Of a stretch of 64,000 nt of DNA, positions 1 through 5,800 are shown piece by piece. Numbering within the stretch: position 1 is the stretch's first letter; each line of letters begins with the position of its first letter. The stretch is taken from contig OZ076420.1 in NCBI GenBank assembly GCA_964187785.1, forward strand, positions 47,616,001 through 47,680,000, read 5' to 3'. The DNA is from Amphiscolops sp. MND2022 (Eukaryota). Position numbers and translations under genes: made by a program. The notes beneath the pieces are model-generated. The model did no database searches, was not told the DNA's origin, and saw only the letters and a list, made by a program, of their open reading frames with translations.

Positions 1-70
1 CATTGAACCAAGACACTTAATTAGTTCGTGAGACGAAATCAAGGCAATTAAATCCTGAGACGCATTCAAT

Positions 71-275
71 TGGGGCGCTTTTGACTGGGGCGCTTTTGAC
101 TGTGTCTTTTGGGGGCTTTTGACTGGGGCGCTTTTGACTGGGGCGCTTTTGACTGGCGCGCTTTTGACTGGGGCGCTTTTGACTGGGGCGCTTTTGACTG
201 GGGCGCTTTTGACTGGGGCGCTTTTGACTGGGGCGCTTTTGACTGGGGCGCTTTTGTCTAGGGCGCTTTTGTCTG
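71..275. repeat. 15-bp G-rich minisatellite (TGGGGCGCTTTTGAC)n, about 13 units with a few variants
   Basis: Directly visible tandem units from 71 to about 275; the last units degrade to GGGCGCTTTTGTCT. Confidence 0.97.
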
Positions 276-361
276 GTAACCTATGATTTGCATGTTTTTT
301 GTACGGGTTTCGACACGAATAGGGATTCGTTCTCATTTTAAAATCATACAAAACAGCCAAC

Positions 362-519
362 CTCAATTTAGGTTCAATGCAACTACCGTCATCACACTGA
401 AACATGTTTTTTGGGCAAGTTCCACAGACTTCGGAGCTCTCATCGTTGTCGCAGTTGACAAATCCGTTGCATAAATCGAGCAGCCTAATACATGCTTCGT
501 TCCGGCATTTGAATTGATT
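362..519 (-). CDS. Internal exon encoding LDL-receptor class A (LDLa) repeats, probably of the adjacent DEG/ENaC gene
   Basis: Manual translation: NQFKCRNEACIRLLDLCNGFVNCDNDESSEVCGTCPKNMFQCDDGSCIEPKL(R). Acceptor TTCCTATTTTTAG at 520-532; donor AG|GTTGGC at 361. Phase 0 start, phase 2 end. The FxC..xCI..xxCxG..xC..E pattern is the LDLa consensus. Confidence 0.85.
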
Positions 520-814
520 CTAAAAATAGGAATTCTAGTGATAATGAATCACACAAAAATTCAGTTTCTTTCAATGAATCCCAAAATCTCAAAGATTTTA
601 TTTTTCTCTTCATTCGCATAAAAAAGTTGTAATCCATGATGTTTCGTTCCATGGTCCAATTTTTAAGTTTCAGCTGTTTATCCGAGTTTGGGCTGTGCAA
701 GTAAATTATCTAATCGCTTTGAAATACAATTTAAAGATCAAAAACAGTATGTTTTTTTATTGAAAATCCGAAAGTTGCAAGCTTAAGTTCTCAAAACTTT
801 CACTCAAAACTTAC

Positions 815-1423
815 ATAGAACAACCGTCGTGCTATTGAGTAATCGCTCTTCCAAGTCACAACATAGGACATTTTACATCTATCGTTCGTTGGGGTTTTCG
901 CAATACTCGTGGTATTGTTACGACTTCCTTGTGAATCGAACCCAACACCTGAAATTTGCGCACGTAGAGTTTCCTGGATTTCTGTCATTCCGACCGAGTT
1001 GAGGGCTTCGAACTCAATCATTTTGTACAGATGAGACGTTTTATTGTATTGTAACAGCATGGACTCCTTTAGTTTGTTGGAATTGCAAATCGTCACTGTA
1101 GGCAGTTGCATTTTGTGAGGGTACTTGATTTGAACACTGACAGTTACGGGGTATTTGTAAACATCTCTGAACATGTCGGTGATCTGGTACACGAAACAAA
1201 CTGTGCTGACCATCACGGCAAGAAGCCAAAAGACTTTGCGATGAAAATTTGCGGAAGAAACAACTTTCGGGACCCCATGGGCTGTACAGTCCAGTAACCA
1301 TGACCTGATCATCCAGAGAAACGAGAGCATCTCTTTTTGGTCATTGTCCAGGGGCGATGAGTCACCAGCACTACCTTGAAAGTACAAAGACGTAAAATCA
1401 CGTCTCCTGTGATTCTTATTCAT
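815..1423 (-). CDS. DEG/ENaC (amiloride-sensitive sodium channel family) first coding exon
   Basis: ORF 800-1423 has the pre-TM1 HG motif (DCTAHGVPKV), TM1 (RKVFWLLAVMVSTVCFVYQI), YPVTVSV and the LPTVTICNSN signature. Canonical donor TAT|GTAAGT at 809-814, phase 0. Confidence 0.93.
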
Positions 1424-1848
1424 AGAAGGTTTTTCAAACTTTTACAGGTTTCCACATGTTTCGATTGATGGAGAACAATTCCCTTCTCGTGCGATAAACT
1501 TCGTTAAAGTGCATTTTCATAAAGTGGTTAACTCCATTGTTTCAGAAATTCGAAATTCACTCACATGAAAAAAACCAAAGCATGCGGTCCAGAATTTCTT
1601 GAAAAGCTGAGTTTGTATCAGGTTCTAACAAATTTTTTTAAAATTATTCTTTCAAAACAGTATTTTCTGAAAAATTCTAGAGTCTTTAGTTAGCATTCAA
1701 CAAATGTTTTGAAAGGTCTCGTGAATGAAAGAAGTTTCCATGTTCGATACACATTTCCTCAAATTCTGTGTTTAAATTCTCAAAAATGGAACTTTGGTCA
1801 TAATCATGGCAAAGCGTTGTAGTTCGCTACGCTTCAGAACATTATACC

Positions 1849-2109
1849 TGTTCTATTTCTTGGTTTGATAAGGAAAAAGTGTGGAATTTTGTTAAAAGTA
1901 TCTTTAAACACAAAAGCAAAGTCAAAGCGATCTTCTTTCTACCCTGATTGGTAACACAAATGATATATCTTCAGTACGAAATATTTAGCACTATGTTTAC
2001 AAATATGTATAAACATAAATCTCATTTGAACTATAAAAGTCTATAGAAAGATCTGAGTTTGATTGACGTTGTCACCGAAAAGATCGGTTCGGCGTTACAC
2101 CGTATAACA
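1849..2109 (-). repeat. 3' LTR of the gypsy element
   Basis: Direct repeat of 7382-7641 with about 21 differences counted by eye (about 92% identity). Minus strand reads TGTTATACGG...AGAACA. Confidence 0.93.
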
Positions 2110-2122
2110 TTTCCTCCCTTCT
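2110..2122 (-). promoter_or_regulatory. Polypurine tract
   Basis: AGAAGGGAGGAAA on the minus strand abuts the 3' LTR. Confidence 0.85.
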
Positions 2123-2849
2123 AGGCTTTCTTCGTTCATTGGTTCGATGCTCCTGGAGTCGGTGTTTTCTCCCGGGTGAAATCTGCCGGTTTCGTCAATG
2201 GTTTCGGGGGCTCTTTTCGGATGTTCCATCTTCCACCTGTAACAGTTTTGTTTTAAAATCACACCCAGAAGTTTTTTGTATAAATAACCCCCCGTATCTA
2301 TTGGGTTGTCTACTTTCACGGTTTGACCGTCTTGTTCCTTCATTTTAGGGTGTATTGTTTTAAAGTTTTTTCTCACCGGTATTTGTTTCACGGTCGGTAT
2401 GTAGATTGAGTTCATCCTCGGGGGATGTTGTCACTGGTCGGTAGCAGCCGTCTTTCTCGGAGGTATCGTGATTTTCGAAATCACTCTCATCGTCCTCTAT
2501 CTCGCCTTCCTCGCTTTCCGAGTCTGATTAGGTTGTTTGATTTGGAGCGATTTTAACTTTTCCATTGAGTACGTCTCGTAGTACTTCGTTCTATTGTATA
2601 TATTTACCATCGACTCCTCTGAGCCAATGGGGATTTTTAGGGGTGATGTTGTTTCCGATTTTCGGTGCTGCTTTCCTTTCTTTCAGAAATACAATTGGAC
2701 CCGAAATAAATTTTCGGTGATTTATATTTCCGGTGTCGGTGGTTACGGTATGTTCCGTACCATTTACCGCGGTTTGTAAATTTTTCTTGAAACTACCTTC
2801 CAAGTTTTTTGTTATGGTTCTTTTCAAAGAATTGAAAAGTATATAGACC

Positions 2850-5800
2850 AACCGAATTTTTTTCTCCGGAGATTTTTCGGCTAGTCCTTTTTCTTCACTC
2901 TTGGTCCGGCCATAACGATATGATTTGACAATTCTCCATTACCATTTCTGGTTAAATAGATGGGGATCGTCGGTCTATCATTTGCTAAAACAGGTAGTTC
3001 CGACCAGTTAGAAAGGAATGTTCTTCCATTTTTGATCACGTTCGTTAGTTCGGTTCTTGGTTTCCGGCCGTGATGTAGTTCAAATGGCGTGATTTTTTTC
3101 CCGTATGTATTGTTAAACGCATCACATTCAGTGCTCTATTTACACATTCGGTTAGACATATGTTTTCTTCTAGGTTAGTAATGATCAAATTCTTCAGTGC
3201 CTGTATTGCGCGTTCTACTGCTCCCGTTTTGGTATCAATTCTCGGTGTACTCTATTCAGTTTCTATGTTTTTTTGACTCGCAAAATGCTTTGTATTCTTT
3301 CGAAATGAACGCTCCGCCTTTATCCGTTTTTATTTTCTCCGGTAGTCCGTTCAAGTTAAAATTTTGTTTTAGAAAGTTTAAAAGTTCTTTCGTTTCCGTT
3401 GATTTACAGATTTTTGCCGCCGGCCCTTTGCTAAATCTGTCTACCGCAATTAGAATGAATTTAGTATTCACCGTTTAATTTTTCATTATTTAATTTTCCG
3501 GAAAAATCAATTTGAATTTCTTGTCCCGACTCCGCTAATGTTTTTACTTTTCCGAATTAGCGTTTCGGTGTTTGGTAATTTGAATTTTTACCGGATGCCA
3601 TGCATGCCACACACTTTTTTGTATTCTCTTCGATCTCCTTTTGCAGGTTTGGCCACCAAAAAATTTTGGCTTCCGCTGCCATTTTGTGGATCCGGCGTGT
3701 CCAAAGTGTAGCGTTTCCAGTAACTTCTTTCTCAATTCGTTTTGCACTATTATTCGGTTATCATTGAAGTTTAGTCCTCTCCTTGTTACCAAATTTTTCA
3801 AATGTTGTTCGGTGTGCTTCCGAAACCGTGTTTTCCTCGTTTCGTCTCATTGCGTTCCTGACTCTATTCAGTTTCGCGTCGGTAGCTGATTTGGCTATCA
3901 GCGTTTTCAGGTCGAGCATGAAGTTGATTTCGGTCTTTTTGATTGTTTCTTCGTTATCTTTTTGTTCCCGGTAATTTTGTCGATCACTTGGTTGATCTGT
4001 ATAAATTGGGCTTCTTTTCCTTCTGTGTTGAATGCCTTCAGATCAACGATTGGAAAGTTGTCGCCCCGGATTATCTGGCTTTCGCCCTCACTTTCTGTTT
4101 CGGCTTCTTCAATTATCTCCGGTTGTTGCGGTTCATGCTCGTCCTCTTCTACTCGTTCTTCTAATGGTTGGTACCCTCCTCCGAATCTATTGGCCCGTGT
4201 TAGTAGCTCGCCGTCTATTTCCGCAATCTCCTCCTTGTTTCTTTTGTTTGGTCTTGAGGGGACCCATATTTGTCTTTGGGCACTCATGTCGAACTTTCTT
4301 CGCATCGTTCCGGGTCGGGAGATTTCTAGACGTCTCTCTACCAGTCTGAGTGTCTCCGGGCTTTTTCTCTTTCTTTTCTGATAAATTCCATTAGTTCGGC
4401 AGTTGCGCCCAGTGAAAGTAATCCCGGTCCATTTGGTCTTAAATAGTGGTAAATTTTGTAATGACATTTGATTTGAATTTGAGTTTTGATTCGAATATCG
4501 GATTGGACTTTCCGTTTTAGCTTTTCGTCGTCGAATATTTATTGTGAGTTTCGTTTGCTCGCGTTTTTTGTTCACGTCTCGGTTCTTCTCGAATGCTCTA
4601 TTCCGCTGTGATTGATCGTTAAATTTTGTTTAGGTTGTTTTTGTTCTTTCCGTCGGGTTTTGTGATTGATCGGCGAATATTAGTCCGTATTTTCTATTTA
4701 ACTTGGCTATTCTGAGAGGATGTTAATTACGTATTGCTCATCGTATACGTCTTTGGTCGTTCCGTTTTCTACCGGATTTCTACTTAGAAAGGCGGTAAAT
4801 TTTAAATTACCTCCTGCGATATGTTGAATAGCTATGTCAATGTGTGCAAGGCGGTCTAACCATCTAGTTAATCTCGCGGTATACTGTTTAATACATCGGT
4901 TCCTTTTTTTTCAAAGGTTCAAGCGCTCGGTGATCTGTGTAAAGAAAAACTTTCTTCCCGTATAGATAAAATCGGAATTCTTCTAAACCCCAGACGACTG
5001 CCAGTAAATCTAGTTCTCCGATTGAATAAGTTTTTCGCTGTCAGTTAAATATATGCTACCGAAGGCTATCGGTTTAATTTCCCCGTCCGATTGTTTTTGC
5101 CATAATGTAATTCCGAGGCCGGTTTTGCTTGCGTTGGTTGTCATTATGTTTTCTCTATCTTTTGCGTAGTGTGCCAAGCAAGGTTCTTCGGTCAACAATT
5201 TCTTTATAATATTGAAATCTTCATCTTGTTGCTTTCCCCAAATCCATGTGGAATATTTCTTCAGAAGTCTTCGGAGTCTTTCCGTCCTTTCCGATATTCT
5301 CGGTAAAAATTTTGCCAGTTATAGAACTGCACCGAGAAATGATTTCAGTTGTTTTTGGTTTTTCGGGTGTTTAAAATCCAGTGTTGCTTTTACTTTTTCT
5401 TTATTTGGTTTGATTCCCGTTCCGTCAATTTCGTTCCCCATCCATTTGGTTCTGTTCAGAAGGAATTCGGATTTTTTTCGCTTGCGCGGTATCCTGCATT
5501 CTCCAATTTTCCCAATATATCGAATAGTTTCTTTTCGTGTTCTTGTCAGTCACCCCGTGTTACCACTATAAAATCATCCAGCCATGCCGGTGTGGAGTAC
5601 TCTCATGTTCGGTCGATTTTTTCTTGGAATATTGTGGAGATATCGGCGAGACCGTAGAATCCTTTTTTGAATCTGTAATAACCACTAAAGTTCCCTCGCG
5701 TTTTGGCAAATACGCATTGTCGGCATGTCTCTTTTGTCTGTAGGATTTTTATACAGCTGTCATTTAGTTTTCTTGAGTCGAATGCTATTTTTACCGACTT

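What the first reader, a model, noticed from the sequence alone, without database searches (positions are those of the whole stretch)
362..1423. DEG/ENaC channel apparently carrying LDL-receptor class A repeats in its ectodomain
Seen: a clear DEG/ENaC first exon ends at a GTAAGT donor in phase 0. 295 bp downstream on the same strand, a strong acceptor opens a phase-0 exon encoding most of one LDLa repeat and the first half of a second. The ORF track misses this exon because it has no start codon. Known: characterised ENaC, ASIC, FaNaC and degenerin subunits have no LDLa modules, and the insertion point, after the PxVTxCN strand, is the variable finger region. LDLa repeats are Ca2+-dependent protein-binding modules. 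Inference: a channel subunit with a ligand-binding or protease-regulated extension. Caveats: the first Cys of repeat 1 is not in this exon (an alternative donor after DRCKMSY or an extra exon could supply it), and I cannot tell whether this architecture is already catalogued.
Basis: partly seen in the sequence, partly recalled or inferred. Interest (0 to 1): 0.75.

Follow-up and report, generated by a model that had tools for sequence, protein, structure and literature searches.

The report
Sodium channel gene with LDL-receptor modules
The window holds the first two exons of a roughly 34-kb gene for a DEG/ENaC-type sodium-channel subunit with three LDL-receptor-type modules in its outer "finger"; the design is real, but untested predicted proteins of the same design already exist for acoel worms, acorn worms and echinoderms.

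Summary
On the minus strand, exon 1 (1423..815, Pfam ASC E 2.4e-21) ends at TAT|GTAAGT. After a 295-nt intron, tttttag|AAT opens exon 2 (519..362, Pfam LDLa E 5.8e-8) in phase 0.

The window is cut from a 409-kb public contig, so I followed the gene past the left edge. Exon 3 completes LDLa repeat 2 and adds a third repeat. Five further exons supply the rest of the channel, including the thumb cysteines and TM2 with a GFS filter. The model is 747-759 aa, has no internal stop, and runs colinear at 45% identity with RefSeq proteins of two acoels.

Relatives carry the exon 1/exon 2 junction inside a single ORF (RRHFLYNEFEC against our RRLFY|NQFKC). A same-contig paralogue keeps the LDLa exons under purifying selection (dN/dS 0.33).

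I found no RNA evidence; the sequencing runs on offer were genomic. One 3' junction (exon 7/8) lacks a canonical donor in the conserved frame.

The architecture is not new. Dozens of predicted ASC+LDLa proteins exist in hemichordates and echinoderms, and this scan already reported a paralogue in this genome (s1-175690). I found no paper that describes or tests it. Function is inferred only.

The parts
815..1423 (-). Exon 1 (609 nt, 203 codons). It encodes the N-terminus, the HG motif (TAHG), TM1, the LPTVTICN strand, the start of the finger, and the conserved 'DRC' cysteine. It ends TAT|GTAAGT in phase 0. A possible internal acceptor (tttcaag|G near 1384) means an undetected upstream coding exon cannot be excluded.
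   Evidence: sequence and translation. (Pfam ASC 76.8 bits). (aligns to ASIC5, FaNaC, ENaC and ASIC1 N-terminal parts). (no homologue of the acoel N-terminal exon found upstream).
520..814 (-). Intron 1, 295 nt, GTAAGT...tttttag. It is specific to this lineage: absent in the Symsagittifera and Convolutriloba-like relatives, present at the same position in the close paralogues.
   Evidence: (S. roscoffensis exon B spans aa 80-329 without an intron). (paralogue ORFs read through the same donor as V-S or V-R).
362..519 (-). Exon 2 (158 nt). It encodes LDLa repeat 1 (NQFKC...SSEVC, with a degenerate acidic motif) and the first half of repeat 2 (CPKNMFQCDDGSCIEPKL). It ends AG|gttggc in phase 2.
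   Evidence: Pfam LDLa 33.3 bits. (homologues). (same intron position and phase in three lineages). (dN/dS 0.28 against the paralogue).
1..361 (-). First 361 nt of intron 2, which is 1,625 nt in all and runs off the left edge. Exon 3 lies 1,264-1,491 nt beyond window position 1, at L001:12688-12915.
71..276 (.). 15-nt tandem repeat, 14.2 copies, inside intron 2. It is not coding. The long open frame the window shows after exon 2 is read-through of this repeat.
   Evidence: TRF.. (word depth up to about 44,000 against about 77 for single-copy flanks).

Best explanation
Window 1423..362 (minus strand) is the 5' end of an eight-exon, roughly 34-kb gene. On ENA ERZ25074608 contig ctg185109_96x_l it spans about 157,097-191,183. 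It encodes a 747-759-aa DEG/ENaC subunit.

Shown: the protein keeps all the sequence hallmarks of the channel. These are the HG motif, TM1, the PTVTICN strand, the Cys-rich thumb, and TM2 with a GFS filter. Between the first finger helices and the rest of the ectodomain it carries three LDLa modules. Repeat 1 is degenerate, repeat 2 is canonical and split by intron 2, and repeat 3 has an atypical CC. It belongs to a well-supported clade with acoel RefSeq proteins XP_063713819.1 (Symsagittifera roscoffensis) and 'degenerin mec-10-like isoform X2' (Convolutriloba macropyga). The genome is therefore probably an acoel or a close relative.

Inferred mechanism: the subunit forms a trimeric cation channel. 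The LDLa modules sit on the finger, the part of the family where ENaC is regulated by proteases, FaNaC binds its peptide, and ASIC forms its acidic pocket. There they act as Ca2+-dependent docking sites for a basic extracellular protein, peptide or matrix tether, whose binding or pull modulates gating.
For: Exons and domains: Pfam ASC in exon 1 and LDLa in exon 2. LDLa in exon 3, and ASC profile positions 240-455 in exons 6-8.

Sequence source: contig L001 is identical to the window over 11,423 nt.

Splice sites: exon 3 has tgtttag|A TGC GAC GGC and CG|gtgagt, completing repeat 2. Exons 4-8 lie on the same strand in the same order. All junctions are GT-AG and frame-consistent, and the model has no internal stop.

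Orthologs: 45% identity over the full length to P0157 and P0164. The L006 gene record shows ASC, LDLa, ASC.

Junction support: ASC-N and LDLa sit in one ORF in relatives. The intron 2 position and phase are conserved in three lineages.

Selection: a same-contig paralogue (L008) has the same exon order. dN/dS is 0.22 for exon 1 and 0.33 for exons 2+3. Synonymous changes exceed non-synonymous ones per site, Fisher p 0.002. All LDLa cysteines are kept.

Phylogeny: the clade is supported at 100 in two trees.

Finger position: alignment to solved ASIC1, ASIC5 and FaNaC structures.
Against: - There is no transcript evidence. The four runs found are genomic: contigs run straight through intron 1 and there are no joints in the gene.
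- At the exon 7/8 junction the conserved frame (…ASVYTALN) runs into TAA 11 codons on, with no GT before it. The only canonical pairing (TCC|GTTTAT … ACAG|TTT) drops 12 residues that are conserved in the S. roscoffensis ortholog, which has no intron there.
- Repeat 1 has lost two acidic positions and two residues of the D-x-S-D-E motif. Repeat 2 has Leu where ligand-binding LDLa modules usually have Trp. Canonical ligand binding is therefore uncertain.
- Intron 3 is 21 kb and full of retroelements.
- The contig is probably the same assembly as the window, so it is not independent of it.
- The gating mechanism is pure inference.
Confidence: 0.72

Rival explanations
1. The architecture is real for the family, but this copy is a decaying or hypomorphic paralogue. 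A splice-donor loss or an insertion in the last ancestral exon, plus a degenerate first LDLa repeat, mean it no longer makes a full channel.
For: - No canonical donor exists in the conserved frame at exon 7/8. The 5.8-kb interval is flanked by AACAG on both sides and holds degraded LTR-like repeats (224 nt, 72%) and integrase- and gag-like ORF remnants.
- The S. roscoffensis ortholog has one continuous exon there.
- Repeat 1 reads CNGFVNC where the paralogue keeps CDGTANC.
- Several near-identical paralogues exist, so redundancy is plausible.
Against: - No stop or frameshift occurs in any of the eight exons.
- A fully canonical GT-AG alternative keeps the frame (model A).
- dN/dS against the paralogue is 0.22-0.35 in exons 1-3.
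- The shortened 'CDNDES.EVC' motif is shared with the paralogue, so it is an older stable feature and not recent decay.
Confidence: 0.2
2. The LDLa exon is not spliced to the channel's first exon. It belongs to another gene, or it is an exon-shuffling relic lying in the channel's first intron.
For: The only support is the lack of RNA data and the weak donor (gttggc) at the end of exon 2.
Against: - Relatives have the same junction inside a single ORF, RRHFLYNEFEC against RRLFY|NQFKC.
- Phases match at all three junctions around it.
- The weak donor's position and phase are conserved in three lineages.
- No other first exon or LDLa-bearing gene lies in the 64-kb window or the 36 kb beyond it.
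- The paralogue has the same exon order.
Confidence: 0.03
3. The gene is intact, but the LDLa modules are not gating-ligand receptors. They serve folding, trafficking or quality control (the RAP- or Boca-type chaperone route used by LDL-receptor proteins), or they are a rigid Ca2+-stabilised spacer.
For: - The Trp of the usual Lys-binding pocket is missing in repeat 2, and repeat 1 is degenerate.
- The relatives' inserts are very varied (CUB, Kringle, PAN, SRCR, TSP1, F5/8C). That fits generic adhesion or scaffold modules better than one specific ligand.
- The C. elegans EGAS channels (EGF plus ASC) gave no currents when expressed alone (PMC10424705).
Against: The acidic D-x-S-D-E cages of repeats 2 and 3 are strictly kept between paralogues and orthologs. 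The finger is the family's usual regulatory site (established knowledge of ENaC, FaNaC and ASIC).
Confidence: 0.3

Closest known systems
Acoel RefSeq predictions: XP_063713819.1 (Symsagittifera roscoffensis, 874 aa) and 'degenerin mec-10-like isoform X2' (Convolutriloba macropyga, 972 aa)
   Same: They share the ASC-N, three LDLa, ASC-C layout and align colinearly at 45% identity over the whole model. The phase-2 intron inside LDLa repeat 2 is the same. They form one clade with our model, supported at 100.
   Different: Both have an upstream exon encoding an 80-125-aa N-terminal extension (MDLS...) that I did not find here. They have no intron between ASC-N and LDLa1, and none at our exon 5/6 and 7/8 junctions. 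Their repeat 1 keeps the Trp and the full acidic motif. They are computer predictions with no functional data.
Ambulacrarian mosaic DEG/ENaC predictions (e.g. Saccoglossus kowalevskii XP_077866593.1 with 9 LDLa repeats; Ptychodera, Glandiceps, Acanthaster, Patiria, Asterias, Anneissia, Antedon, Amphiura)
   Same: LDLa arrays are inserted at the same place, between ASC profile positions of about 100 and 128.
   Different: They have 4-11 repeats, often with Kringle, PAN, CUB, TSP1, SRCR, F5/8C or FN3 domains. They are only about 25% identical to our model. In the trees the acoel clade does not nest within them, though a single clade is not rejected (AU p 0.12). One origin or two therefore stays open. 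Some are misnamed 'LRP2-like'.
Characterised DEG/ENaC channels (ASIC1, ENaC alpha/beta/gamma, FaNaC, MEC-4)
   Same: HG motif, two TM helices, PxVTxCN strand, thumb cysteines, GxS filter. Sequence matches to solved structures.
   Different: As far as I know, none has LDLa or any other autonomous module in the finger. In our protein the stretch equivalent to chicken ASIC1 residues of about 107-160 is replaced by about 270 residues that include the three modules.
[quoted passage not shown]
   Same: The only named precedent I could cite for a DEG/ENaC subunit fused to an extracellular cysteine-rich module. Its function is also unresolved: it gave no currents when expressed alone.
   Different: The module is EGF, not LDLa. 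It belongs to a different, nematode lineage. I did not compare where the module sits in the protein.

Membership tests
DEG/ENaC (Pfam ASC, PF00858) | Profile match above the curated cut-off at both ends of the protein | tested here: met
   Exon 1 scores 76.8 bits, profile positions 5-103. Exon 7 scores 29.6 bits, positions 310-389. Exon 8 scores 59 bits, positions 398-455. The cut-off is 23.6.
DEG/ENaC (Pfam ASC, PF00858) | His-Gly motif before TM1 and the PxVTxCN strand after TM1 | tested here: met
   LLDCTAHGVPKV and LPTVTICNSN in the exon 1 translation. They align to ASIC5 and FaNaC.
DEG/ENaC (Pfam ASC, PF00858) | Second TM helix with a G/S-x-S selectivity filter and a conserved Glu | tested here: met
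   SNFGGLLGLYLGFSVLTILELVDF in exon 8, off-window at L005:16057-16404.
DEG/ENaC (Pfam ASC, PF00858) | Cys-rich thumb | tested here: met
   CQAECQLELMGNVCGCVDN...CGTEDVLATKC...DCYCPNTC in exons 6-7, colinear with P0157.
DEG/ENaC (Pfam ASC, PF00858) | Trimeric, amiloride-sensitive cation current | not testable with these tools
   Needs expression and electrophysiology.
LDL-receptor class A module (PF00057) | Profile match above the curated cut-off | tested here: met
   Exon 2 scores 33.3 bits and exon 3 scores 26.7 bits, against a cut-off of 24.1.
LDL-receptor class A module (PF00057) | Six cysteines in about 40 residues | tested here: inconclusive
   Repeat 2 has all six, split across exons 2 and 3. 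Repeat 1 has five, plus a conserved Cys 24 residues upstream in exon 1. Repeat 3 has five, with a CC pair, plus one Cys 10 residues after it. The total from DRC to LKC is 18, an even number. Disulfide pairing was not tested.
LDL-receptor class A module (PF00057) | Ca2+-cage motif C-D-G-x-x-D-C-x-D-x-S-D-E | tested here: inconclusive
   Repeat 2 reads CDGNIDCRDGSDE: met. Repeat 3 reads CDDFDDCPRDKSDE: met, with one extra residue. Repeat 1 reads CNGFVNCDNDESSE: not met (two Asp changed to Asn, two residues shorter).
Acoel three-LDLa DEG/ENaC clade (RefSeq 'degenerin mec-10-like' of C. macropyga) | Full-length colinearity, shared intron inside repeat 2, monophyly | tested here: met
   45% identity over 733-773 aligned positions. 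The intron ...AG|gt...ag|A TGC is present in all three. The clade is supported at 100 in two trees.

The most novel reading that the evidence does not exclude
Mosaic-finger DEG/ENaC channels are a functionally distinct, unstudied class. Their built-in binding modules (here three LDLa) would make the channel a direct receptor for an extracellular protein, peptide or matrix tether, gated in a Ca2+-dependent way. LDLa-in-the-finger, shared by acoels, hemichordates and echinoderms, would go back to one insertion event, making it a rare architectural character that bears on the Xenambulacraria question. My data do not exclude a single origin (AU p 0.12), and they do not show one either.
Probability: 0.1. 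Interest if true: 0.7.

Novelty: new member of a known kind. Interest (0 to 1): 0.35.

Why it matters
The finger is where DEG/ENaC channels receive their gating inputs: protease cleavage in ENaC, peptide binding in FaNaC, the acidic pocket and toxin sites in ASIC. A lineage that put autonomous binding modules there could show how new gating inputs evolve in this family. It would also give an experimentally tractable channel with a built-in receptor.

The predicted protein sets of acoels, hemichordates, echinoderms and amphioxus hold many such mosaic channels. In seven full-text searches I found no paper that describes or tests one. Some are misnamed as LRP2-like.

This locus adds one more member and a curated exon model. 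It adds no new principle. The scan had already met the same design elsewhere in this genome.

Tried and rejected
- RNA evidence. Laid on window 1-2600 they are genomic contigs with no joints in the gene. Nothing can be said about splicing or expression.
- Transcript-derived proteins in the big protein collections. The searches with exon 1 and with P0157 returned only genomic ORF fragments and RefSeq models.
- An upstream N-terminal exon like the MDLS... exon of the acoel orthologs. tblastn and motif searches of the window found none.
- Reading the 5.8-kb exon 7/8 interval as a simple transposon insertion. The AACAG flanks fit, but the LTR-like repeats lie 110 nt and 720 nt inside the boundaries and the ends are not TG..CA. 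This is left open.
- Following the paralogue (L008, L009) to see how it handles that junction. Its exons 6-8 lie beyond the 10 kb fetched, and I stopped there.
- A whole-protein tree of 83 sequences. MAFFT timed out on the repeat-rich proteins, so I used the last 400 residues instead.
- Structure prediction of the spliced product.
- Literature. Seven searches on ENaC, degenerin or ASIC combined with LDLa, LDL receptor class A, Saccoglossus or acoel found nothing on this architecture.

Full report
**1. What is in the window**

The gene lies on the minus strand. An ATG at 1423, with an in-frame TAA seven codons upstream, opens 203 codons that end ...RRLFY (TAT at 817-815). GTAAGT follows directly.

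The translation holds the family's HG motif (TAHG), a hydrophobic TM1 and LPTVTICN. It scores 76.8 bits on Pfam ASC, E 2.4e-21, profile positions 5-103.

After a 295-nt intron (814..520) ending tttttag, an open frame starts at 519 in phase 0: NQFKCRNEACIRLLDLCNGFVNCDNDESSEVCGTCPKNMFQCDDGSCIEPKL. It scores 33.3 bits on Pfam Ldl_recept_a, E 5.8e-8. The frame leaves the exon at AG|gttggc (362/361).

The long "open frame" that continues towards position 1 is read-through of a 15-nt tandem repeat at 71-276.

**2. Following the gene off the window**

The exon 1 ORF is on record on ENA ERZ25074608 contig ctg185109_96x_l, which is 408,891 bp long. The fetched locus L001 is identical to the window over all 11,423 shared bases. 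It is very likely the same assembly and is not independent evidence, but it allowed me to read on. The conversions are L001 position = 11,424 minus window position, and record position = 158,520 minus window position.

- Exon 3 lies 1.26 kb beyond the window edge, at L001:12688-12915. It opens tgtttag|A TGC GAC GGC AAC ATT GAC TGC and ends CG|gtgagt. It encodes (R)CDGNIDCRDGSDEYEKFC, exactly the missing half of LDLa repeat 2 in the required phase, followed by a third repeat with an atypical CC (Pfam LDLa 26.7 bits).
- I walked the contig with three more look-ups.
- A 21-kb intron follows, holding a Ty3/gypsy element on the other strand.
- Five more exons then follow on the same strand and in the right order. 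They encode the GHKYE/DMVLQC palm strands, the GMCYSF motif, the thumb cysteines and TM2 (SNFGGLLGLYLGFSVLTILELVDF), with a stop 28 codons later.
- No second first exon lies in between.

The spliced model is 747 or 759 aa and has no internal stop.

**3. Support from relatives**

A profile-free search of 1.8 billion representatives with exon 1 gave fragments at 42-57% identity in which the ASC N-terminus runs straight into LDLa repeats within one ORF: P0002, P0003, P0011, P0008, P0009.

- P0003 clusters with RefSeq XP_063713819.1 of the acoel Symsagittifera roscoffensis.
- A further search found 'degenerin mec-10-like isoform X2' of Convolutriloba macropyga.
- Both align colinearly with our eight exons at 45% identity. 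The S. roscoffensis gene record lists ASC, LDLa, ASC.
- P0292, an uninterrupted ORF, reads ...RRHFLYNEFECEDANC... where our splice prediction gives ...RRLFY|NQFKCRNEAC.... I take this as the strongest available evidence for the 815-to-519 junction.
- The intron inside repeat 2 has the same position and phase (...AG|gt...ag|A TGC) in the window, in L002 and in S. roscoffensis.
- Intron 1 is absent in those two, but the closest paralogues share its donor.

In all relatives repeat 1 begins N(E/Q)F.C. The only earlier cysteine is a conserved 'RC..Y' Cys that sits in our exon 1 (DRCKMSY), with a loop of 15-48 residues in between. Whether it is the disulfide partner is inference.

**4. Is this copy alive?**

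For:
- All eight exons are open.
- Seven junctions are canonical GT-AG in matching phases.
- A paralogue 136 kb away on the same strand of the same contig (L008) has the same exon order. It differs with dN/dS of 0.22 in exon 1, 0.28 in exon 2 and 0.35 in exon 3. For exons 2+3, synonymous changes exceed non-synonymous ones per site (Fisher p 0.002). Every LDLa cysteine is kept, while the introns barely align.

Against:
- At the exon 7/8 junction the conserved frame (...QFTASVYTALN) meets TAA eleven codons later, with no GT before it.
- The only canonical pair (TCC|GTTTAT ... ACAG|TTT) removes twelve residues.
- S. roscoffensis has one continuous exon there, and reading our two flanks straight through (…ALN-SNKSR-QFLL…) matches it well.
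- The 5.8-kb interval is flanked by AACAG and contains degraded retroelement remains.

I cannot tell whether this is a usable cryptic junction, a non-canonical one, an assembly error or a disabling lesion. I put about 20% on a decaying copy.

The only sequencing runs offered were genomic, so there is no expression or splicing evidence at all.

**5. Where the modules sit**

Exon 1 residues 39-125 align to chicken ASIC1 (6ave_A) residues 19-106. The ortholog P0157 resumes alignment at ASIC1 residue 161. From my own knowledge of the published ASIC1 structure, what lies between is the finger (helices alpha1-alpha3).

Repeat 2 has a canonical Ca2+ cage (CDGNIDCRDGSDE) but Leu in place of the usual Trp. 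Repeat 3 has CDDFDDCPRDKSDE. Repeat 1 is degenerate (CNGFVNCDNDESSE). Its shortened form is shared with the paralogue, so it is not recent decay.

**6. How it probably works**

Shown: the protein has the sequence hallmarks of a DEG/ENaC pore-forming subunit plus three LDLa modules in the finger.

Inferred: it forms a trimeric cation channel whose finger-borne modules dock a basic extracellular partner or tether in a Ca2+-dependent way and so bias gating.

The main functional rival is that the modules serve folding, trafficking or adhesion and do not gate the channel. Supporting that rival, the only named precedent of a module-bearing family member, C. elegans EGAS ('EGF plus ASC'), gave no currents alone (PMC10424705).

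**7. Novelty**

A search with the channel part of a Saccoglossus protein listed dozens of RefSeq and UniRef predictions carrying PF00057 plus PF00858.
- They come from three hemichordates and six echinoderms, often with Kringle, PAN, CUB, TSP1, SRCR, F5/8C or FN3 domains.
- Amphioxus has F5/8C plus Kringle versions.
- Acoels also have CUB (with or without LDLa) versions.

In two trees our model and the two acoel proteins form a clade supported at 100, on a long branch outside the ambulacrarian LDLa clade. Holding all LDLa-bearing channels together is not rejected (AU p 0.12). One origin or two is unresolved.

Seven literature searches found no description of the architecture.

This scan had already reported an intact paralogue 15.3 Mb away in the same genome, with the same conclusion (s1-175690). 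I re-derived its claim about acorn worms, echinoderms and acoels independently.

**Verdict.** The finding is real and correctly read. The locus is a new member of a catalogued but functionally unstudied kind.

Noticed in passing
window 71-276: A 15-nt tandem repeat (TGGGGCGCTTTTGAC, 14 copies) inside intron 2. Its word depth in the genomic runs reaches about 44,000, against about 77 for single-copy flanks. The unit is therefore extremely abundant elsewhere in the genome (satellite or dispersed repeat).
   Followed up: partly
window 930-1392: The 5' three quarters of exon 1 break into short contigs with 3-4 times the depth and fixed variants in the reads, while 382-929 and 1392-1915 are single-copy unitigs. 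Near-identical paralogues exist. Three ORFs at 85-86% protein identity are on record (P0286, P0287, P0288).
   Followed up: partly
L008:9911-17596 (same contig, about 136 kb from exon 1, same strand): A paralogue with the same exon order (exons 1-5 seen). It has a Tc1/mariner-like ORF in its intron 1 and only 2.3 kb where our gene has the 21-kb intron 3. Its exons 6-8 lie beyond another retroelement and were not reached.
   Followed up: partly
L005:10244-16056 (off-window, between exons 7 and 8): There is no canonical splice donor in the conserved frame. The 5.8-kb interval is flanked by AACAG on both sides and holds a 224-nt direct repeat pair (72%) plus integrase- and gag-like ORF remnants. 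The S. roscoffensis ortholog has no intron here.
   Followed up: partly
L003:14333-18258 (off-window, intron 3): An apparently complete Ty3/gypsy element on the opposite strand, with ORFs of 696, 235, 184 and 145 aa covering RT, RNase H and integrase. It lies next to a 354-aa ORF with no family match.
   Followed up: no
window 3256-3801: Retroelement integrase fragments (an rve-like 71-aa ORF and an H2C2-like ORF) on the minus strand, about 2 kb upstream of exon 1.
   Followed up: no
public protein sets: Several echinoderm DEG/ENaC proteins with LDLa and SRCR domains are named 'low-density lipoprotein receptor-related protein 2-like' or 'very low-density lipoprotein receptor-like' (Acanthaster, Patiria, Anneissia), although they carry the ASC channel domain. 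Amphioxus has ASC with F5/8C, Kringle and Xlink domains. Mosaic fingers are widespread in invertebrate deuterostomes and acoels.
   Followed up: partly
window 1384 region: tactttcaag|GTAGTGCTGG inside exon 1 looks like a splice acceptor, about 14 codons before the conserved EMLSF. That is where the acoel orthologs join an upstream N-terminal exon. The annotated ATG at 1423 may therefore not be the only start.
   Followed up: partly
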